Shown here in pieces: positions 4,979 to 49,329 of a stretch of DNA of 64,000 bases. The DNA lies in IMG/VR virus record IMGVR_UViG_3300029258_003221, positions 1 through 64,000 of that record. One strand, written 5' to 3'. The notes below the pieces were generated by a model. That model saw only the letters and a program-made list of their open reading frames with translations. It was not told the DNA's origin and did no database searches. The number at the start of each line of letters is the position of its first letter. Position 1 is the stretch's first letter. A program made the translations under genes and the position numbers.

Positions 4979-5329
4979 ATGAAACCCGACACGTAGAACG
5001 TCAAACATTACAGCTATATCTTTGTCAGGGAAGACCTGACAACCTCTCAGCAGGCGGTACAATGCTGTCATGCCGCCATCAACGCCACTGCCAAATACGG
5101 TCTAGGCGATTTGCCAGACCATCCTTATCTTGTCATCTTGGCAGTCAAGAATGAATCCAAGTTGCTCCGGGTACAAAAATACCTGTCAGAGCACGGAATT
5201 CAGTTCTCTTCTTTTCACGAGTCTGATCTCGATAATGAGCTTACGGCTATTGCGACCGAGCCCATTAAAGAGCATCAACGTGCAATCTTCCGCAAGTATC
5301 AGTGCCTTAAACCAAGGGAGGCTGCGTGA
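4979..5329 (+). CDS. Pth2-like peptidyl-tRNA hydrolase with an in-frame TAG at codon 6 (4994-4996)
   Basis: AGGAG-N6-ATG; MKPDT*NVKHYSYIFVREDLTTSQQAVQCCHAAI...FHESDLDNELTAIATEP. The Pth2-type VRxDL/QxxHAA motif lies upstream of the ORF-track start 5111, and no alternative start codon lies between the TAG and the motif. Confidence 0.8.
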
Positions 5330-5511
5330 TGAGTCAAATCAAAGACCTTATCGAAGAACTAAAATCTCTTACCCGTTATGACATGGAAGTCAGAGAATAT
5401 GGTCGAACCAAATTTCGTGATTCACATGCTGAAGCACGTGAAGTGGTTTCTGGAGATGGAGACTGGGTGGAGTGGGAAGATATTGTTTATTTGATCAAGG
5501 AGTATGAATGA
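5326..5511 (+). CDS. Hypothetical protein
   Basis: ORF track; GTGA overlap with the upstream gene. Confidence 0.6.
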   Translation: MMSQIKDLIEELKSLTRYDMEVREYGRTKFRDSHAEAREVVSGDGDWVEWEDIVYLIKEYE

Positions 5512-5521
5512 GTTTGAATGT

Positions 5522-5671
5522 GGGACAGAGGTGGATTGGTTCACACAAACCAACAATTTGTTGTTGGCCTGCATGGGTTCGAGTCCTGACAGGATGCAAT
5601 GAATTGTTGGGGAGGCAGAATTGCCAGCCGTTTTCGGAACGGCCTTGCAGGTTCGATTCCTGCCTGTCCCA
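5522..5671 (+). ncRNA. Expanded tRNA-like RNA (150 nt)
   Basis: Perfect acceptor stem GGGACAG/CTGTCCC; Leu-like D-arm; perfect T-arm GCAGG-TTCGATT-CCTGC; long variable arm GCCGTT-TTCG-GAACGGC; extra hairpins where the anticodon arm should be. Confidence 0.6.
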
Positions 5672-5676
5672 CTTAT

Positions 5677-5751
5677 GGGTGCGTAGCTCAATTGGCAGAG
5701 CAGCGAGTTCTAGCCTCGTGTTTGTTGCAGGTTCGATCCCTGTCGCACCTT
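5677..5751 (+). tRNA. tRNA with anticodon CTA (amber suppressor), Trp-like body, no encoded CCA
   Basis: Cloverleaf: GGGTGCG/CGCACCT; GCTC/GAGC; GCGAG-TTCTAGC-CTCGT (CTA at 5710-5712); GCAGG-TTCGATC-CCTGT. Confidence 0.85.
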
Positions 5752-5756
5752 TTTTA

Positions 5757-5914
5757 CCGCAGGTAGCTCAGTTGGTAGAGCGTTGCTTGTGTTGAAGCTA
5801 AGACAATGGTGTACAACATTGAATTAGTGAATGCACACGTGCTGTCAAAAGTGGCCACTTTTGGCTGTCATGTAAACATAGCAGAGGTCGGAGGTTCGAG
5901 TCCTCAACTGCGGA
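5757..5914 (+). ncRNA. tRNA-like gene whose anticodon loop is replaced by a 92-nt structured segment
   Basis: CCGCAGG/ACTGCGG; GCTC-AGTTGGTA-GAGC; anticodon stem TTGCT(5783-87)/AGCAG(5880-84); AGGTC; GGAGG-TTCGAGT-CCTCA. Confidence 0.65.
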
Positions 5915-5954
5915 ATATTTTCATTTTTCCCCGGATAGAAAGGAAGAAGTTGTG

Positions 5955-6356
5955 ATGTAGAAATGGCATTGGAATCAAAAACTTGGACCTGAAAACTGTC
6001 CATACATGGTGCGATGGGTGTTTGATTTTTACTTCTTCACCATTCGTATTCATCATTGGCTTCATAGTGACGATTTGCGTCACCCCCATGATCATCCTTG
6101 GTCTTTTTGGGCCATTTGTTTGTGGGGCGGATACACAGATGTTTCACCAGATGGCGAGGACCGAGTGCGACCGGGAAGTGTACGGTTTCGCTCGGCTCTT
6201 CACCAACATTCTGTTAAAGTTGATGAAGGTGGATGTTGGACCATCCTTTTGACAGGACGTGAGCATCGTCGTTGGGGTTTTTGGGTTAATGGTAAGTTTC
6301 GTAAAAGAAACAAGTATTTCTATATGATGGGTCATCACAATCCATGTGATTCATAA
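5955..6356 (+). CDS. Cupin-like phage protein with an in-frame TAG directly after the start (5958-5960)
   Basis: AAGGAAG RBS then GTG ATG TAG AAA TGG CAT TGG, giving M*KWHWNQKLGPENCPYMVRW...HHWLHSDDLRHPHDHPW; the ORF-track start 6006 lacks an RBS. Confidence 0.7.
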
Positions 6357-18960: not shown

Positions 18961-19552
18961 TCTTATCCAAAAGGCTGTTGAATACTACGAATCCTGTGGC
19001 TATCAATACATAGAAGTTCCATGGGTTGTCTCACCCGAAGCACTGAACATTACTCGTCCAGCAAATCTTCCACCCATTGACAGCCCTCGCCTTGTTGCTT
19101 CAGGGGAACAATCCTTTTTGGAAATGATCCTTAAAGGAGAATTAGGAAAAGGGAAGTTTTGTTGTGCTACACCTTGTTATCGCCCCGGAGATCAAGGCAA
19201 AGACCCATATCACTTCGATCAATTCTTCAAAGTGGAATTGATCTCCAACAAAAGTGATGATACTGAAAGTGACAGAGGCAAATTTATCATTGATGCAATG
19301 GGGTTCTTTCAACGTCGGGGAGTCAGAATTCTGATCACAATGCCCGAAGATGAAGAAAGGGCAGAGTGCACAGAGAGATATTCTCCTATGGACCTTGTTG
19401 CCCCACTCGGCGATGAAGAAATCGAACTGGGTTCTTACGGAGTCAGGTGGAACAAAAACACAGGGTATTGGGTCTACGGAACAGGATTGGCTCTCCCCAG
19501 ATTTCAGCAGGTGCTCGATGGGATATCACAGAACAAAAATCAAGAAGGGTAA
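18935..19552 (+). CDS. Stand-alone class II aminoacyl-tRNA-synthetase catalytic-core-like protein
   Basis: GYQYIEVPW (motif 1), TPCYR...QFFKVEL (motif 2), GTGLALPR (motif 3). Confidence 0.75.
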   Translation: MQSPLINYSLIQKAVEYYESCGYQYIEVPWVVSPEALNITRPANLPPIDSPRLVASGEQSFLEMILKGELGKGKFCCATPCYRPGDQGKDPYHFDQFFKVELISNKSDDTESDRGKFIIDAMGFFQRRGVRILITMPEDEERAECTERYSPMDLVAPLGDEEIELGSYGVRWNKNTGYWVYGTGLALPRFQQVLDGISQNKNQEG

Positions 19553-19766
19553 GTTGGGCGAGGTCTCAAAGATCGAAGAAGAACTCGCTGAACTCAGAGA
19601 CGCTATCGCACAAGATAACAAAGTAATGGCTTTGGTTGAATTGTCTGACATGTGTGGAGCAATTAAACTCTATCTGGAAAAACACCACCCCTCAATTACA
19701 ATTCACGACTTGCTCAAAATGGCTGATGCCACAGCCTCTGCATTTCAGGATGGGACTCGATCATGA
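19518..19766 (+). CDS. MazG-like pyrophosphohydrolase
   Basis: KIEEELAELRDA...LVELSDMCGAI; start refined to ATG 19518. Confidence 0.65.
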   Translation: MGYHRTKIKKGKLGEVSKIEEELAELRDAIAQDNKVMALVELSDMCGAIKLYLEKHHPSITIHDLLKMADATASAFQDGTRS

Positions 19767-20044
19767 CGACAAGAACGATAGCTGAAACAACAGTCCATGT
19801 TCACCTTGATGGGACTCACAGGCTTATTGAGAGAAGCTTGGATCGTGCCTACAAAGATGCACTTTATGAGTTTGGGATCGATGAATACGCTCACTCAGAC
19901 AAAGTCGAAGAGTGGGAGCGTTCAAGTTGTTGTATCGAAGTTGAATTCGAGAAGCTGATTTTTAGTGGGGGTTATGTTGGCGGCGGAACCACTGTTGTCT
20001 ACAAAGCCCGATGTGAAAAAACCGAGGATGAAGAATATGACTGA
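19763..20044 (+). CDS. Hypothetical protein
   Basis: ORF track; ATGA overlap. Confidence 0.6.
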   Translation: MTTRTIAETTVHVHLDGTHRLIERSLDRAYKDALYEFGIDEYAHSDKVEEWERSSCCIEVEFEKLIFSGGYVGGGTTVVYKARCEKTEDEEYD

Positions 20045-32443: not shown

Positions 32444-32861
32444 ACTCCTCCTCTGCTATGAACTTGCCGAAATCATGTTCATTGAACTCAGCAGTTTCAT
32501 AGACATCCCATCCAAGAACAACAGGGTCTTCGCCAACAGGCAAAGGCTGTCCATGTCCATCTAACAATGTGCCATCACGTTTTACATCAATGTGTTTAGC
32601 TCGCCAGCCATCGTACCAAAAGCCACCACGATTGAATGTGATGCAACCTTTGGGTTTGTATTCAACAACAATGTCAAATGTTGCTTCCTGCCCCATACTA
32701 ACAGGCTTGCGTTGCTTGAATTCTTTGATCTTGCAACTTTTGGGTTCTTTGCTCATCCACTCTGTTTCATTCAACTTATTCATTAGACCAAACATCAACT
32801 TTGTTGGGTCTTTCGTAACCAACTCGAACTTCAAGTAAGTTGGATTCACATTATCGGTCAT
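32421..32861 (-). CDS. Cargo hypothetical protein
   Basis: ORF track; overlaps both neighbours. Confidence 0.7.
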   Translation of the reverse strand: MTDNVNPTYLKFELVTKDPTKLMFGLMNKLNETEWMSKEPKSCKIKEFKQRKPVSMGQEATFDIVVEYKPKGCITFNRGGFWYDGWRAKHIDVKRDGTLLDGHGQPLPVGEDPVVLGWDVYETAEFNEHDFGKFIAEEECEDTEGL

Positions 32862-34849
32862 GCAACCTCCTTCAAATAATGTTCTCTCGCCGCCGCAGCT
32901 TCCTCTATGGTGTCATAAGTCCCGACACTTTGACGACCAACTCTTGCTGACCATCTCCCATTGGCTTGTTTGTAAACACCCTTATGTCCAGAGCCAGCCA
33001 ATTTTTGGCAATCGCATTTTGAGTTTGCCTTCATATTGCCGGGCAATCGTTGAAACTCTTTGCCATGCTCGCACCTGACTGTCACATACTCAAAAAATCC
33101 AGCATATTCTGACGCCAACTCCCACCCTTTATCCTCAAGAAACTGCAACAATTTTTGCTTTCCGTAATCCAAGCAGTTAGTTCTTACACAATCGCATTGG
33201 GCGTGTGGCCGCACGGCAGATCGACGCTTCATAGTGAAAACTTCACCATGTTCGCACCTAATTTGGATTTCACCCTCGCCACTATATTCAGATAGCAACT
33301 CCCACCCACGATTGGCAAAGATTTCAGTCAAGTTATCCTTACCCATCTCAGTCATTCTTTCGCCAGAGGCGATGTCGCAACAACGTGGACAACCACACTC
33401 GTTCTTGAAGTTCTGCACCAGCGTCGTCCAGACATGACCCTTATCGCACTGGATGGTCATATCTCCGTAGTATCCTTTATACTCCGAGAGACGCTTCCAG
33501 CCCCTCCGCTCCATCTCAGTGTCAATAATTTGAGTTTGGTGTTCTTTATCTTGCGGACGTTTAGATGAATAATCCCAAGAGTAGAATTTCTCTTTCTTGC
33601 AATCCATCGAAACAGACGAATCTTCGTAAAGCCAATCTCTAATTCGGAGTGCTGGCGTTCCACTGTAGCTGAACAATGACGCTGTGGAGTTCTTTAGTTC
33701 TCGATCATACTCCTCTTTGCTTCGGTCTATCACAGTATTCTTCGAGACATTGGCTTCTTCAACAATGACATCCACCACATCCTCAAGGAATTTAGGAACA
33801 GCCCCGCAAATGCTGAATGTTGGAGTTTTGTAAACCTTATGCCTGTATTTCGTAGTGCCAACGCTCACTGACCCGTCGCCATCGAAAAGTCCTCGGATGA
33901 AGTGTCTTCTCAACTCTTTAGGAATATCAGGAAAAGAAACAAGAAAGGTTTTGTTCGGAATAACGCCATGTTTCATCAAGGCTTCTACGAAACCAGTGTG
34001 ACAACATTCAAGAGTGTATTTGGTTTTCTTTCCGCCCTTATTTTTGCTGCTCACATGATATGGACCAAGAACCTTGCCTGTATATCCGATTGCATCCTTG
34101 AACTTCTCTAAATGTCTCTTCCCTTCTACAACCAACGAAATACGAAGCCGGTGTGGATTGAGTGCAACTGATCCGTCTGCATAGATGAACCCAAGCCAAT
34201 ATGCCTTTTCTTCTGTGTCTATCTCATCAAAGAAGTTGAAATCAAATGTGTATTTTCTAATCAAACCAGCAGAGCGGCGACTGCCAACTTTCAGTGTTAC
34301 TGCACGCCCGATGATGGCATTCCAAGTTCTATTGGGCAAGCCAGCTTGGATGAACTCTTGACTTTCCTTGGTGTAACTTGAGCGAAGAAAATCATCTTCC
34401 TCAGATGACCACGAAAAATCAGGCTTACTCAAGCCCAGTTTGACCGCCTTGTTCCTAATCTCGGATTCAGTCTTGTCTGAAAGCAATTCAAGCAATTCCG
34501 AATTGCTCATGGTGGCATAATTGGATTTCAACAAATCTAACTCTTTAGAAGTCCATTTCTTTCGCTTTCTGGTAAGCCCCAATCGGCAGGCTCTATCTTT
34601 GATTGCCTTGTATTTGCGGTTCGGAAGCAAATTCGACCATTGATCGGCTGCGATCTTGCCATAATACTGCCTGACAACATCATCTTCCGCCAACTGCCAT
34701 TTAGTATCTTGCGTCAAGCCAAGCCGAGATAATTTGTGTCTTATAGAAGTGTCACTCTTATCCAACTCGTTACTCAACCAATCAGTCGGTTTATCCGCAT
34801 TTTCTACAAGAAATGCCTCTTCTTTCTTAGTCCAATGCTTTCCGCTCAT
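32858..34849 (-). CDS. Multidomain LAGLIDADG endonuclease: 4 Myb-like repeats, double LAGLIDADG, 3 Zn-ribbon repeats, AP2-like domain
   Basis: WTxxE repeats; YWLGFIYADGSV and FIRGLFDGDGSV; GW.LLSEY...C..GH...C repeats; SGHKGVY...GRWSARV...GTYDTIEEAAAAR. Confidence 0.9.
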   Translation of the reverse strand: MSGKHWTKKEEAFLVENADKPTDWLSNELDKSDTSIRHKLSRLGLTQDTKWQLAEDDVVRQYYGKIAADQWSNLLPNRKYKAIKDRACRLGLTRKRKKWTSKELDLLKSNYATMSNSELLELLSDKTESEIRNKAVKLGLSKPDFSWSSEEDDFLRSSYTKESQEFIQAGLPNRTWNAIIGRAVTLKVGSRRSAGLIRKYTFDFNFFDEIDTEEKAYWLGFIYADGSVALNPHRLRISLVVEGKRHLEKFKDAIGYTGKVLGPYHVSSKNKGGKKTKYTLECCHTGFVEALMKHGVIPNKTFLVSFPDIPKELRRHFIRGLFDGDGSVSVGTTKYRHKVYKTPTFSICGAVPKFLEDVVDVIVEEANVSKNTVIDRSKEEYDRELKNSTASLFSYSGTPALRIRDWLYEDSSVSMDCKKEKFYSWDYSSKRPQDKEHQTQIIDTEMERRGWKRLSEYKGYYGDMTIQCDKGHVWTTLVQNFKNECGCPRCCDIASGERMTEMGKDNLTEIFANRGWELLSEYSGEGEIQIRCEHGEVFTMKRRSAVRPHAQCDCVRTNCLDYGKQKLLQFLEDKGWELASEYAGFFEYVTVRCEHGKEFQRLPGNMKANSKCDCQKLAGSGHKGVYKQANGRWSARVGRQSVGTYDTIEEAAAAREHYLKEVA

Positions 34850-46803: not shown

Positions 46804-49329
46804 TTACATTTCTGAAAAATCTATCTCTTCTTCATCCTGCTCTTTAGCGTAATCCTTGATATCCAGATTGTATTTCTGAATATCTTCTTCTGTTGGATCA
46901 GGTAAAGGCGTGGCTCCTGTTGGTCCTTCCATTCCGCCTGATGGGCCTTGATCATCTCCTGTTGGAGCAGGTGCTCCACCCATTCCCATATCATCTTCAC
47001 CGCCTTCTTCACCTTCTGGCGGTTGATCTCCCAACATAGGACTTGGTCCACCAGCTTCTCCACCAATTTCGGTTTCGTCTGGTCCGGGAAGTCCAACGCC
47101 CAAAAGCATTGGGTTTTGAGCAATGATTTGGAGTTTGAGTTCTTCCATCTTTTGGATTTTAAGACGAGCAAGCATCTTCAGAGCTTCTTCTTCATCGTAT
47201 TTCATCCACTTGGTAAGAATATCAAAGTCCGACATGAGTTGTGCTCCTTTCAAAGCACCGGCGTTTTGAATTCTACCAGCTACAACTTCTGATCTTGTTA
47301 GCTCACGCCAATCAGAAGGTGGAGTTAACTTAATTTCCAAATCCTCATAGGCTTCTTTTGGGAAACCAAGCAGCGTTAAGTGACGGTTGCAAATTTCCCA
47401 AAAAGCGTTCTGAATGTGAGATTGAAGTCGTTCGATCATGCGAGCGAACTTCACATCCTGTGCAGACAGGGTGATTCTTGTACTTTGAACATCTTCGTTA
47501 TTGAAATAGTTCTTAGGGAAATTCAGAGCTGTAAACAGTTTATTTCTGAAGTAGACTGTATCATCGATTTCACCAAGATTCTGAGCACCCGGTAAAGTTT
47601 CAACTCTTGTGTTGGAGTTGGGCCTAACAGGAATCCAGTAATCTTCATCGGCTGCTGGTGCGTGCCAACGTTCTTCAACACTGGAGGCACCCGGCAATCC
47701 AGATTTTCCGGTAGCAACCTTTTTCTTTTTGAACTGATCTTTCATTCGTTCAACAAAGGCTTCCGCCCTGTAAGGCGGAAGCTGGAACGTGTCAATATAG
47801 AACACTCTACGTTCTGGTGCTCTTGTCAATCGATAAACCACCATGGCATCTTCCATCAATCTCAATTGATGAGCAGGTCCACGTGCTGCTTCAATAAGAC
47901 TTACACCATATGGATAGAATGTTTGTCTATCATCCCCGACACGAATATGCACAACCTGATCTGCTGCGAATCTAATAGCTGTAGCTTGTTGTAAATCTGC
48001 TTCTGTTGCCTGTGTGACTTCCACACGGGAAAGGCTTTGGTAGTCAGGCCCTTCTTTAGACTGTTGGAATTCAACCAATTTTCCTTTGGTTGTTTCAATT
48101 CGATACATGCTGTCAGGAGGCAATGGAACAAGACCTACGATACCATGTTTAGGGTTTTCCAAATCAATAATGACTTCATAAAAGAAGTCGCCCATGATGA
48201 ATAATCTTTTGGCCATGTCCCAACATGTATTTTGGTCCATATTAAGCATGTCACGATGAAACAATAGATATTCACATTCTTCTTTGACTGATTCATTGCC
48301 GCAAACAACCTGCATTACTCTGCCATCTTCATTTTTCTGGCAATTGTGAACAACTCCCCAGTTTGTACAGAAGTTATGATGTTTCTCAACAGTTAGGTCA
48401 TAGACATCAATCTCTTCCCAAGGTTGTATTCCGACAACTCTTCTTCGATCTTCTTTGCGACCGAGCCATTTCATCTCTTTGTTTGAGAATCCAGCTTTTT
48501 CGATTCGGCTTTTAATTGTCTTGAAGTCATGACCTGTCATGTCAACAATCTGCTGAGTCGTCAATCCTTCAGAGATGTATCGACAAAGTTTGTTAACGCT
48601 TTCAAGTTCAGGATTGTCTTTGCCCGTAGCCCATTCGTCGGCAAACTGTCGTTCGTGAATCCAGCCTTTGCGATGAGTATAAATTCTAGGGAACTGATTG
48701 ACTTTGATTTCGGTAATATCCGGGTTTGGCGAAATGCGATAGAAAGGCATGAGTTCATCACCGGAATTTAGTTCACCTGCTTCTCTCCATGTACCTTTTC
48801 TGGTCATAATTCGGTGATCAGGTGTGCAGATCACATAATTGCCATCATCAAAAATGATTTTGATTGTTTTGGCTTTTTTGGTTTTACGTGCATCAAATGC
48901 CCAGCCAAGCGTATAATCGCCTTTATCCTGATCATAGCAATAGACTAAGAATCGCTCGTTTTCATTGACGAGATCTTCGATCTTTTTATATCCATGTGGT
49001 GTGGCGATAAGAGTATCGCCAGCCAAACAGGTCTCATCTGCGAAAACGGTCATTGCCATTTCGATTTCCGGCATATTTCGCAGTCGTTCGTATTCTTTGT
49101 AGCGATGAACTCTATTAGTGACGGTACTTAAATCTACGAAATCATTAGTGTCTCGAAGGCGAATGGCCCCTCGTCCACCACCTGTAGTTCCGTCATTGCC
49201 ACCCCTGATGTCAGGAATAGCTCCATCAACTGGATATCCCGCTCCACTGGCATCTCGGTCTCTGCGTCTTGCGAGTGGATCATCAGTGAAAGCGTAAGTG
49301 AAAGTTTTGAAATAATCCCACCAAGCCAT
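46804..49329 (-). CDS. gp20: Portal protein, T4 gp20-like, with an intein
   Basis: RLMEDAMVVYRLTRAPERRVFYID, EDYWIP, VETLPGAQNLGEIDD, FARMIERLQ. Confidence 0.96.
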   Translation of the reverse strand: MAWWDYFKTFTYAFTDDPLARRRDRDASGAGYPVDGAIPDIRGGNDGTTGGGRGAIRLRDTNDFVDLSTVTNRVHRYKEYERLRNMPEIEMAMTVFADETCLAGDTLIATPHGYKKIEDLVNENERFLVYCYDQDKGDYTLGWAFDARKTKKAKTIKIIFDDGNYVICTPDHRIMTRKGTWREAGELNSGDELMPFYRISPNPDITEIKVNQFPRIYTHRKGWIHERQFADEWATGKDNPELESVNKLCRYISEGLTTQQIVDMTGHDFKTIKSRIEKAGFSNKEMKWLGRKEDRRRVVGIQPWEEIDVYDLTVEKHHNFCTNWGVVHNCQKNEDGRVMQVVCGNESVKEECEYLLFHRDMLNMDQNTCWDMAKRLFIMGDFFYEVIIDLENPKHGIVGLVPLPPDSMYRIETTKGKLVEFQQSKEGPDYQSLSRVEVTQATEADLQQATAIRFAADQVVHIRVGDDRQTFYPYGVSLIEAARGPAHQLRLMEDAMVVYRLTRAPERRVFYIDTFQLPPYRAEAFVERMKDQFKKKKVATGKSGLPGASSVEERWHAPAADEDYWIPVRPNSNTRVETLPGAQNLGEIDDTVYFRNKLFTALNFPKNYFNNEDVQSTRITLSAQDVKFARMIERLQSHIQNAFWEICNRHLTLLGFPKEAYEDLEIKLTPPSDWRELTRSEVVAGRIQNAGALKGAQLMSDFDILTKWMKYDEEEALKMLARLKIQKMEELKLQIIAQNPMLLGVGLPGPDETEIGGEAGGPSPMLGDQPPEGEEGGEDDMGMGGAPAPTGDDQGPSGGMEGPTGATPLPDPTEEDIQKYNLDIKDYAKEQDEEEIDFSEM
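48343..49029 (-). mobile_element. Intein (229 aa) in the portal
   Basis: N-terminal CLAGDTLIAT, block B CTPDHRIMT, C-terminal VYDLTVEKHHNF...VVHN followed by +1 Cys. Confidence 0.95.

What the first reader, a model, noticed from the sequence alone, without database searches (positions are those of the whole stretch)
5522..5671. tRNA scaffold with intact acceptor and T arms but extra domains in place of the anticodon arm
Seen: 7/7 Watson-Crick acceptor pairs and a 5/5 T-stem enclose 150 nt. Inside are a Leu-like D-arm, a CCAACAA/TTGTTGG hairpin, a second T-loop-like GGTTCGAGTCC, a GGCA/TGCC hairpin and a UUCG-capped variable arm. Perfect outer pairing argues for selection. Inference: a tRNA mimic (decoy for anticodon nucleases, or a Y-RNA/tmRNA-like adaptor). 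The alternative is two fused decaying tRNAs.
Basis: partly seen in the sequence, partly recalled or inferred. Interest (0 to 1): 0.65.

Follow-up and report, generated by a model that had tools for sequence, protein, structure and literature searches.

The report
Conserved remodelled tRNA-like RNA of phage
A huge marine T4-like phage encodes, next to a stop-codon-suppressor tRNA, a 150-nt RNA that keeps the ends and elbow of a tRNA but has a rebuilt middle; a second phage shares it with compensating base changes, so it is a real, selected RNA of unknown function.

Summary
Window 5522-5671 (+) has a 7/7 acceptor stem, unpaired A73, a canonical T arm and a Leu-type D arm, enclosing three extra helices. 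It is the first gene of a tight cluster with tRNA(CUA) at 5677-5751 and another insert-bearing tRNA-like gene at 5757-5914. The host record is a fragment of a roughly 0.5-Mb T4-like phage.

A syntenic metagenome contig (L127:1573-1722) carries a 150-nt homologue at 74% identity. Eight of 48 modelled pairs show compensatory double changes. Two blocks are nearly invariant: an apical module with a second T-loop, and a 17-nt hairpin with the anticodon-like loop UUUCGGA. This argues strongly against "two fused decaying tRNAs".

It is not a canonical tRNA: A8 instead of U8, a six-helix junction, and only 2-3 nt before the T stem. It is also not a YrlA, a tmRNA, a group I intron or a bulge-helix-bulge (BHB) intron.

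My best reading is a tRNA-scaffolded adaptor or decoy that tRNA enzymes process (0.42). The main rival is a decoding tRNA-Arg(UCG) with an extra arm or an unknown kind of intron (0.30). No RNA data exist.

The closest known cases are T4 species 1 RNA and the "enigmatic introns" of Lak megaphage tRNAs. I rate it a new variant of a known kind.

The parts
5522..5528 (+). Acceptor stem, 5' strand (GGGACAG), followed by A8 G9 at 5529-5530
   Evidence: It pairs 7/7 with 5664-5670. Pairs 3 and 4 change on both sides in the homologue L127:1573-1722. Position 8 is A in both homologues, not the universal U8.
5531..5546 (+). D arm: 3 bp plus a G.A pair, with a GG-containing loop, of tRNA-Leu type
   Evidence: The Rfam tRNA alignment places it here. 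It resembles the tRNA-Leu D arms of related phages. Pair 11-24 changes U-A to C-G in the homologue.
5550..5610 (+). Long arm. A 15-bp helix (5550-5564 with 5596-5610) carries an apical module (5565-5595): unpaired UGG plus a hairpin whose loop matches the T-loop consensus.
   Evidence: The fold is. Four compensatory double changes occur in the helix, and three middle pairs open in the homologue. The apical module is 91% identical between homologues, while the helix strands are 47-53% identical. G.U pairs make the + strand 7 kcal/mol more stable than the - strand.
5614..5625 (+). Short hairpin GGCA-GAAU-UGCC
   Evidence: The homologue has GGUA-GAAA-UAUC. Pair 3 changes C-G to U-A and pair 2 changes G-C to G.U. 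This rejects the alternative reading of a 5-bp Leu(CAG) anticodon arm over 5609-5625.
5626..5643 (+). A plus a 17-nt hairpin GCCGU-UUUCGGA-ACGGC. It looks like an anticodon arm, with triplet UCG at 5634-5636.
   Evidence: 17 of 18 positions are identical in the homologue. Deleting 5546/5547-5623/5624 makes ARAGORN call tRNA-Arg(UCG) at a raised threshold. Only CUU (5644-5646) separates it from the T stem.
5647..5671 (+). T arm (5647-5663), acceptor 3' strand (5664-5670) and discriminator A5671
   Evidence: The T stem is invariant and the T arm is 88% identical overall. A73 is conserved.
5677..5751 (+). Neighbouring canonical tRNA with anticodon CUA (amber suppressor), 5 nt downstream of the target
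   Evidence: ARAGORN and Rfam, 52.2 bits. The order and the 5-nt spacing are the same in L127.
5757..5914 (+). Third gene of the cluster: a Val-like tRNA-like gene with G33 and an 85-nt structured insert between positions 33 and 34
   Evidence: Rfam tRNA scores 33.4 bits. Six relatives share N-G / insert / NACA(U/A), and one relative has no insert. The insert folds with z = -3.0 on the + strand and 0.0 on the - strand.

Best explanation
Window 5522-5671 (+) is a genuine, selected RNA gene: a tRNA-derived RNA with six helices.

It keeps what tRNA-processing enzymes read: a 7-bp acceptor stem with unpaired A73, a canonical T arm, and a D arm with GG. Its middle is rebuilt into three parts:
- a 61-nt long arm tipped by an invariant module with a second T-loop and an unpaired UGG;
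- a small covarying hairpin capped by GAAU or GAAA;
- an invariant 17-nt hairpin with the loop UUUCGGA.

Shown: the anatomy, the strand, conservation with compensatory changes in a second phage, and its fixed place 5 nt upstream of an amber-suppressor tRNA in a three-gene cluster.

Inferred:
- It is co-transcribed with the cluster, cut out by RNase P and 3' trimming, and given CCA by the host enzyme.
- It then acts as a tRNA look-alike, not as an ordinary decoding tRNA.
- Its two invariant surfaces bind a partner, such as a tRNA-recognising host or phage protein. That would make it a tRNA-scaffolded adaptor or decoy.
For: 1. Conservation pattern of a functional RNA. The homologue L127:1573-1722 is 74% identical overall. 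Of 48 modelled pairs, 95.8% of cells pair, against 35-44% when the 3' partners are slid. Eight pairs change on both sides, against 0-1 when slid. The apical module is 91% identical and the 17-nt hairpin 94%, above the neighbouring genuine tRNA (79%) and the flanking gene DNA (65-76%).

2. Departures from a decoding tRNA occur in both homologues. Both have A8 instead of U8 and a non-purine at position 15. A14 is kept only in the window copy and is G in L127. The central junction has six helices. Only 2-3 nt lie between the anticodon-like hairpin and the T stem.

3. The lineage clearly makes non-decoding tRNA shapes.
- The neighbour at 5757-5914 and its six relatives all have G33.
- Relative G001 has four tandem tRNA-like genes whose anticodon arms end in UUCG or UCCG tetraloops.
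- The same record holds 114-nt and 139-nt RNAs with only an acceptor stem and a T arm.

4. The RNA-level strand is clear. G.U pairs favour the + strand, which folds at -65.9 kcal/mol against -56.2 for the - strand.

5. The insert is not a repeat. No other copy exists in the 234-kb record.
Against: - No expression or end-mapping data exist. All 11 public runs that hold the sequence are DNA.
- Only two family members were found, so the covariation rests on one pairwise comparison.
- The invariant 17-nt hairpin is exactly what a real anticodon arm looks like.
- CGA, the codon an UCG anticodon would read, makes up 21% of Arg codons in this phage.
- Paralogues in relative G001 combine a shared inserted module with different, apparently canonical anticodon arms. 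That looks like real tRNAs carrying an add-on.
- No binding partner is identified.
Confidence: 0.42

Rival explanations
1. It is a true decoding tRNA-Arg(UCG). A ~79-nt domain (5547-5625) has been built in between the D arm and the anticodon arm (5627-5643). The domain is either retained as an extra 'expansion' arm or removed by an unknown, non-group-I, non-BHB pathway, like the enigmatic short introns of megaphage tRNAs.
For: - The hairpin at 5627-5643 has 5 perfect pairs and a 7-nt loop with U33, G37 and A38. It is invariant in the homologue.
- Deleting the insert in silico yields an ARAGORN tRNA-Arg(UCG) call at 110% of the default threshold.
- The R1 model aligns this hairpin to the anticodon arm of a normal tRNA-Pro.
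- CGA is 21% of Arg codons in the phage.
- Relative G001 has four tRNAs with one shared ~55-nt module after the D-loop GG and different anticodon arms.
- The neighbouring gene family shows presence and absence of its insert at one fixed site.
- Rnl1- and Rnl2-type RNA ligases occur in relatives.
- Lak megaphage tRNAs have unexplained introns (PMC6784885).
Against: - The variable loop would be only 3 nt here, and 2-3 nt in the homologue.
- A8 and U15 break universal core pairs, and the D arm is of class II (Leu) type.
- The apical part of the 'intron' is as conserved as the 'exon' hairpin.
- There is no BHB motif, and no splicing endonuclease or RtcB in the held fragments.
- No group I signal appears in the region.
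- No insert-free allele of this gene was found.
Confidence: 0.3
2. It is a Y-RNA-like partner of a phage Ro60 protein. This is a special case of the adaptor idea: the long arm or the invariant hairpin would bind Ro60, and the tRNA-like body would recruit a nuclease or another effector.
For: Relative G006 (459 kb, 91% complete) encodes a Ro60 orthologue with TROVE and Ro60 vWA domains, both above their cut-offs. A tRNA-like gene with an anticodon-loop insert starts 36 nt downstream on the same strand. Bacterial YrlA Y RNAs mimic tRNA and lie next to rsr (bioRxiv 10.1101/312249).
Against: - No TROVE match exists in the G000 or G001 fragments.
- The YrlA model gives only 25 bits against 69, and that hit bridges two adjacent genes.
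- The topology is opposite to YrlA: here the acceptor end is free and the long arm is closed.
- G006 has no full-length homologue of the target.
Confidence: 0.08
3. It is debris: two fused or recombined tRNA genes, or a tRNA-Leu-like gene wrecked by an insertion. It would be transcribed and trimmed but have no function.
For: - The body resembles class II tRNAs.
- The interior holds a T-arm-like piece and a direct repeat, UUGUUGG twice.
- These phages carry arrays of more than 50 tRNA genes, which are prone to recombination.
- Only two members are known.
Against: - Eight compensatory double changes occur, and no helix is lost across 26% divergence.
- The interior blocks are the most conserved parts.
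- The 'direct repeat' is not kept as a repeat in the homologue, yet both copies stay complementary to the 5' strand.
- Every helix is perfect in the window copy.
Confidence: 0.07
4. It is a cis-acting processing or stability module. This tRNA-shaped leader would serve mainly to ensure RNase P entry and correct maturation or dosage of the suppressor tRNA that follows 5 nt downstream.
For: The position directly upstream of tRNA(CUA) and the 5-nt spacer are the same in both phages. Other relatives place a different small acceptor-plus-T-arm element in the same locus, upstream of the cupin gene, with a tRNA(CUA) next to or near it.
Against: Such a role does not need two invariant internal modules or a 61-nt covarying arm. 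More distant relatives have the suppressor tRNA without any such leader (L136-L138).
Confidence: 0.06

Closest known systems
Bacteriophage T4 species 1 and species 2 stable RNAs (rnaC, rnaD)
   Same: Both are oversized stable-RNA genes (139 and 119 nt) that sit inside the tRNA cluster of a T4-type phage. rnaC ends in a perfect T arm and an acceptor-like stem. Their function is still unknown (PMC9697503).
   Different: There is no sequence or model homology. The R1 model hits only the T4 class II tRNAs (Ser, Leu), not rnaC or rnaD, and BLAST shares only T-loop words. rnaC lacks a D arm and the two invariant modules seen here.
'Enigmatic introns' in tRNA genes of Lak megaphages (Devoto et al. 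2019, PMC6784885)
   Same: These are short, non-group-I insertions in tRNA genes of ~0.5-Mb phages. They are highly conserved where present, and one is predicted to look like a tRNA itself. The target's insert likewise holds a T-arm-like module.
   Different: The Lak introns were called with tRNAscan-SE in eukaryote mode, and their positions in the tRNA were not checked here. The target's insert lies between the D arm and the anticodon-like hairpin. No insert-free allele was found for the target.
YrlA (tRNA-like bacterial Y RNA, Rfam RF02553)
   Same: Both are non-decoding tRNA mimics with T arm, D arm and acceptor, a long helix where the anticodon arm belongs, and sometimes class II-like variable arms. 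A related phage has a Ro60 gene next to a tRNA-like gene.
   Different: YrlA is circularly permuted relative to tRNA: its 5' and 3' ends lie in the Ro-binding stem and its acceptor is closed. The target has free acceptor ends. The Rfam score is far below threshold, and no Ro60 gene lies in the held fragment.
Class II tRNAs (tRNA-Leu and tRNA-Tyr of the same phage lineage)
   Same: The D arm, A73, the T arm and a hairpin just before the T stem all resemble them. The R1 model's best partial hits are mostly class II tRNAs: tRNA-Leu of G012, tRNA-Tyr of G011, and Ser and Leu of T4. A tRNA-Pro of G001 also scored highly.
   Different: The target is 150 nt rather than 82-90 nt. It has one helix too many, A8 instead of U8, and no Leu or Tyr anticodon loop. 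The CAG look-alike is disproved by covariation.

Membership tests
Canonical elongator tRNA (Rfam RF00005) | 7-bp acceptor stem with unpaired discriminator, 5-bp T stem and T-loop consensus, D loop with G18 G19 | tested here: met
   All are kept in the homologue.
Canonical elongator tRNA (Rfam RF00005) | Score at or above the Rfam gathering threshold | tested here: inconclusive
   It scores 29.4 against 29 bits, but only in the small-region scan, and only with the anticodon arm replaced by a 78-nt local gap. The default whole-window scan missed it, as did ARAGORN.
Canonical elongator tRNA (Rfam RF00005) | Universal core: U8-A14 pair, purine 15, one nucleotide (26) between D stem and a single 17-nt anticodon arm, variable region of at least 4 nt, length about 70-95 nt | tested here: not met
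   Both homologues have A8. Position 15 is U. Either 3 nt plus a 61-nt arm follow the D stem, or the variable loop is only CUU. The length is 150 nt.
tRNA-Leu (class II) | Leu anticodon loop (NAG or YAA) in a 5-bp arm | tested here: not met
   The GGGGA-GGCAGAA-UUGCC reading has G33 and a G.G mismatch. The homologue's changes support the 4-bp hairpin 5614-5625 instead.
tRNA-Leu (class II) | A73 and a Leu-type D arm with a G13.A22 pair | tested here: met
   Whether LeuRS can charge it cannot be tested here.
YrlA / Y RNA | Rfam YrlA score; 5' and 3' ends paired in a Ro60-binding stem with a closed acceptor; gene next to rsr (Ro60) | tested here: not met
   The score is 25 against 69 bits, across two genes. 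The ends are free at the acceptor. There is no TROVE match in G000.
tmRNA | G3-U70 alanine identity pair, internal tag reading frame, Rfam tmRNA match | tested here: not met
   Pair 3-70 is G-C here and A-U in the homologue. No tmRNA match was found in the region.
tRNA interrupted by a group I intron | Group I catalytic core within the insert | tested here: not met
   There is no Intron_gpI match at E up to 10 in 5300-6200. The same model does find the group I intron in the tRNA at G000:121538-121851. At 79 nt the insert is too short.
tRNA with an archaeal or eukaryal BHB intron | Bulge-helix-bulge motif at the exon-intron junctions, plus a splicing endonuclease and an RtcB ligase | tested here: not met
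   The closing helix is a continuous 15 bp without 3-nt bulges. No PF01974 or PF01139 match was found in G000 or G001. Those records are only 44-46% complete.
T4 rnaC / rnaD | Homology to T4 species 1 or species 2 RNA | tested here: not met
   The R1 model and BLAST do not match L010:1909-2172. Only the genomic setting and the acceptor/T-arm design are alike.
Lak megaphage tRNA introns | Insert-bearing and insert-free alleles of the same tRNA; sequence relation to the Lak introns | not testable with these tools
   No Lak intron sequences were in hand. No insert-free allele of the target was found in 25 related records, 5 MAGs or 36 metagenome loci.

The most novel reading that the evidence does not exclude
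The target and its homologue represent a new structural class of tRNA-shaped RNA in huge phages. A complete tRNA body carries, at the D-arm/anticodon-arm junction, a long arm ending in a second, self-contained 'elbow' (a T-loop plus unpaired GG). Such an RNA could engage two elbow- or tRNA-binding sites at once. One version would be a charged, CGA-reading tRNA with an extra arm that shields it from host tRNA-targeting defences. Another would be a bridging adaptor of the Ro60/Y-RNA kind. It may also switch between the proximal and distal pairings of strand 5550-5556, both of which are conserved.
Probability: 0.2. Interest if true: 0.8.

Novelty: new variant of a known kind. Interest (0 to 1): 0.6.

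Why it matters
Phage tRNA-like RNAs have lacked a function for fifty years (T4 species 1 and 2 RNAs). The short inserts in megaphage tRNA genes are also unexplained.

This element gives a compact, testable example. It has a defined secondary structure, two invariant candidate binding surfaces, a covarying scaffold, and a fixed link to an amber-suppressor tRNA.

It also lies in a lineage that remodels tRNA genes in many ways:
- anticodon arms capped by tetraloops;
- modules inserted in the D loop;
- inserts between positions 33 and 34;
- a Ro60 gene next to a tRNA-like gene.

If the extra arm is retained on a working tRNA, that would widen the known structural range of tRNAs. If the RNA is a decoy or adaptor, it would point to a new layer of phage-host conflict over the tRNA machinery.

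Tried and rejected
**Searches that found nothing useful**
- Exact-word scans of IMG/VR with the T arm plus acceptor, the 17-nt hairpin (two versions) and the apical block found nothing or only chance hits in coding DNA.
- A two-block pattern in 185,579 genomes found nothing.
- BLAST against 50,697 phage records found only a tRNA cluster of Virus Rctr197k at 72% over the neighbouring tRNA.
- BLAST of the target in 25 related phage records found only T-arm words.
- The R1 model found no further full-length member in 20 related records or 5 MAGs.

**Expression and population data**
- All 11 public runs that hold the region are DNA.
- Laying contigs of four runs on 1,401 bases showed a strain variant with 13 substitutions in the region and none in the target. 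About 1.4 were expected, so this is not significant. The reported joints belong to ordinary tRNAs of other organisms.

**Readings rejected**
- MITE or repeat: the record holds no other copy of either insert.
- Leu(CAG) anticodon arm over 5609-5625: covariation contradicts it.
- Nested complete tRNA inside the insert: the T-loop is not next to the inner 7-bp stem.
- BHB intron and group I intron: see the membership tests.
- TAG recoding of the phage: reading TAG as sense opens no more frame than reading TAA or TGA as sense, and the capsid, portal and terminase genes are intact under code 11.
- Low-threshold ARAGORN calls on the region (Thr, Ser) are not credible.

**Host inference**
- Relatives sit in MAGs of five unrelated families, which is most simply mis-binning.

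Full report
**Setting**

The window is the first 64 kb of a 234,631-bp IMG/VR virus record (G000, 42% G+C, CheckV completeness 44%). It encodes a T4-type major capsid protein (Gp23), a portal protein (Gp20, carrying an intein) and a large terminase. The capsid protein has hundreds of relatives at 80% identity or more. Several lie on contigs of 343-546 kb. The record is therefore a fragment of a huge T4-like phage of about 0.5 Mb. The public runs that hold the region are seawater and sediment metagenomes. MAG labels give no consistent host.

**The observation**

- The acceptor stem pairs GGGACAG (5522-5528) with CUGUCCC (5664-5670), 7/7 Watson-Crick. A5671 is unpaired and no CCA is encoded.
- The T arm GCAGG-UUCGAUU-CCUGC lies at 5647-5663.
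- The D arm GUGG-AUUGGUUC-ACAC lies at 5531-5546.
- The hairpin CCAACAA/UUGUUGG, the second T-loop motif at 5576-5586, and the hairpin GGCA-GAAU-UGCC at 5614-5625 are all there.
- The 17-nt hairpin lies at 5627-5643.

ARAGORN and the default Rfam scan miss the element. A sensitive Rfam scan of 5300-6200 matches the tRNA model end to end at 29.4 bits (gathering 29, E = 6.5e-4). In that match 78 nt stand where the anticodon arm belongs.

The RNA folds at -65.9 kcal/mol (z = -4.2). The fold has acceptor, D arm and T arm. It also has a 15-bp helix (5550-5564 with 5596-5610) capped by a 31-nt module, and two small hairpins. The + strand is about 10 kcal/mol more stable than the - strand, because of G.U pairs.

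A strict search for a T arm followed by a 7-nt strand that pairs with a site upstream finds five elements in the record. Markov-chain randomised copies of the genome give 0.75 on average.

**Neighbours**

Five nucleotides downstream lies a canonical tRNA with anticodon CUA (5677-5751, 52 bits). Five nucleotides after that lies a 158-nt gene (5757-5914). It matches the tRNA model at 33.4 bits, with about 85 nt inserted in the anticodon loop. The cluster follows two small ORFs on the same strand, and a cupin-like gene follows it. A promoter-like site lies at 5036-5063, but such sites are not enriched in the region.

**Homologue and covariation**

No homologue appeared in the phage database, in IMG/VR word scans, or by BLAST in 25 related records. 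Scanning metagenome contigs with the downstream cupin protein gave syntenic loci.

One of them, L127 (84% protein identity), has the same gene order. Its 150-nt first element, L127:1573-1722, aligns with the target at 74% identity. On the six-helix structure:
- 95.8% of cells pair, against 35-44% when the 3' partners are slid by 1-3 columns.
- Eight of 48 pairs change on both sides: two in the acceptor, one in the D stem, four in the long helix and one in the small hairpin. The slid controls show 0-1.

Conservation is uneven, in the way expected of a working RNA:
- apical module 91%;
- the A plus 17-nt hairpin 94%;
- T arm 88%;
- strands of the long helix 47-53%;
- the adjacent genuine tRNA 79%;
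- the cupin gene DNA 76%.

The proximal hairpin (5550-5556 with 5561-5567) also remains fully paired in the homologue. The 5' strand therefore keeps two alternative partners. This evidence is incompatible with random decay of two fused tRNAs.

**What it is derived from, and which hairpin is the anticodon arm**

The D arm matches the tRNA-Leu genes of related phages. The T arm and the CUU before it match their tRNA-Tyr. A covariance model of the two homologues (R1) gives its best partial hits mostly to class II tRNAs. These are Leu in G012, Tyr in G011, and Ser and Leu in T4; a tRNA-Pro of G001 also scored highly. The body is therefore class II-like.

Three registers were considered.

1. A Leu(CAG) arm at 5609-5625. 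The homologue's changes reject it, because they support the 4-bp hairpin 5614-5625 instead.
2. The long arm as an extended anticodon arm, followed by two 'variable' hairpins.
3. The invariant hairpin 5627-5643 as the anticodon arm (loop UUUCGGA, triplet UCG). Under this register, 5547-5625 is an insert after the D arm.
   - In silico deletion of the insert gives an ARAGORN call of tRNA-Arg(UCG).
   - CGA makes up 21% of Arg codons in the phage.

I cannot decide between registers 2 and 3. Either way the RNA departs from canonical tRNA in both homologues. It has A8, U15, one helix too many, and only 2-3 nt before the T stem.

**What the insert is not**

- It is not a group I intron. There is no match here, although the same model finds one in the tRNA at G000:121538-121851.
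- It is not a BHB intron. The closing helix is continuous, and no splicing endonuclease or RtcB gene is found in G000 or G001.
- It is not a repeated mobile element.
- It is not a known ribozyme or other Rfam family.

**Lineage context**

Related huge phages carry 12 to about 60 tRNA-model matches and many remodelled ones:
- G001 has four tandem tRNA-like genes whose anticodon arms end in UUCG or UCCG tetraloops. Three of them share a D-loop insert.
- G001 also has four oversized tRNAs that share a ~55-nt module after the D-loop GG but have different anticodon arms.
- G011 has tRNAs with 20-40-nt inserts in the anticodon loop, and a tRNA-Sec.
- The target's neighbour at 5757-5914 belongs to a seven-member family. 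Its members have covarying anticodon stems, an invariant G33, a conserved NACA(U/A) (Val-like), A73, and an insert of 0 or 63-117 nt between positions 33 and 34. The inserts seem to fall into two unrelated sequence families, judged by eye.
- G006 has a Ro60 gene followed 36 nt later by an insert-bearing tRNA-like gene.
- RNA ligases of the Rnl1 and Rnl2 types occur in relatives, but not in the held G000 fragment.

**Interpretation**

The element is a real, selected, tRNA-derived RNA. I favour a non-decoding tRNA-shaped adaptor or decoy (0.42). On this reading, tRNA enzymes process it and its two invariant modules are the working surfaces. I favour it for three reasons:
- The tRNA core is non-canonical in both homologues.
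- The interior module is as conserved as the anticodon-like hairpin.
- The lineage demonstrably makes anticodon-less tRNA shapes.

The strongest rival is a decoding tRNA-Arg(UCG) with an extra arm or an unknown kind of intron (0.30). Support comes from the perfect, invariant anticodon-like arm, the codon usage, and the G001 paralogues with varied anticodons. A Ro60 partner role, a leader role for the suppressor tRNA, and debris are less likely.

No RNA data exist for this phage, so processing, CCA addition and charging are all inferred.

**Comparison with what is known**

The closest precedents are the T4 species 1 and 2 RNAs (rnaC, rnaD) and the 'enigmatic introns' of Lak megaphage tRNAs.
- T4 rnaC and rnaD sit in the T4 tRNA cluster. 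rnaC has an acceptor-like stem and a T arm, and their function is unknown (PMC9697503).
- One of the Lak introns was predicted to encode a tRNA-like sequence (PMC6784885).

The target shares their setting and design but shows no detectable homology with T4 rnaC or rnaD. It fails the defining tests for YrlA, tmRNA, group I and BHB introns. It is best called a new variant of a known kind.

**Limits**

- The family has only two members.
- The genome is a 44% fragment.
- Read laying was used once, on 1,401 bases.

Noticed in passing
window 5677-5751; also G000:211217-211284 (-), outside the window: There are two tRNA genes with the amber-suppressor anticodon CUA, the second with a shortened D arm. 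The record still reads well under the standard code: TAG ends 13% of long ORFs, and the capsid, portal and terminase genes are intact. The role of the suppressors is therefore open.
   Followed up: partly
window 5757-5914; relatives L127:1817-1957, L128:284-419, L129:161-350, L131:14-151, L004:2278-2417, L136:2384-2456: This is a Val-like tRNA-like family with an invariant G33 instead of U33, a conserved NACA(U/A) and A73, and covarying anticodon stems. An insert of 63-117 nt lies between positions 33 and 34, and the inserts seem to fall into two unrelated sequence families (by eye). More distant relatives have no insert at all.
   Followed up: partly
window 46804-49329 (-) and 32858-34849 (-): The T4-type portal gene carries an intein. 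A 663-aa ORF has a LAGLIDADG motif. The genome is rich in selfish elements.
   Followed up: no
G000:121538-121851 (+), locus L001: A tRNA gene is interrupted by a ~240-nt group I intron (Rfam 40.6 bits). ARAGORN calls it Leu(TAA). However, the body is class I, and joining after U33 to the 3' exon CAUAA would give anticodon CAU. Similar group I tRNAs occur in relatives L110 and L117.
   Followed up: partly
G000:134422-134560 (-) and G000:146976-147089 (-): Two more oversized RNAs have an acceptor stem and a T arm. One is a 139-nt tmRNA-like element with a G3-U70 pair, which ARAGORN calls a tmRNA with a 13-residue tag. The other is a 114-nt element in which a long hairpin replaces the D and anticodon arms, as in T4 rnaC.
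   Followed up: no
L011 (G001:141300-142300, - strand) and L015:16673-16803, L016:18439-18567, 19236-19370, 19720-19847: Relative G001 has four tandem tRNA-like genes whose anticodon arms end in UUCG or UCCG tetraloops. Three carry a shared D-loop insert with UUCG and GCAA tetraloops. A second four-member family shares a ~55-nt module (ACUUGGRC ... CCCCnAC ... UACAAAC) and has different anticodon arms.
   Followed up: partly
L167:2-1465 and L167:1501-1588 (G006:160047-163134): A 459-kb relative encodes a Ro60 orthologue with TROVE and Ro60 vWA domains. An insert-bearing tRNA-like gene follows it 36 nt downstream on the same strand, which resembles the bacterial rsr/Y-RNA arrangement.
   Followed up: partly
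L124:58-150 (G011:80837-80929) and L012:245-601 (G001): A complete 533-kb relative carries a tRNA-Sec gene (76.5 bits). Relative G001 carries a full-size tmRNA gene.
   Followed up: no
L182-L186 (genome contigs): Capsid relatives at 64-84% identity lie in MAGs labelled Bacteriovoracaceae, Chloracidobacterium, Neisseriaceae, Acidimicrobiaceae and Acidobacteriaceae. One is a 546-kb contig. These are most simply phage contigs mis-binned into bacterial MAGs.
   Followed up: no
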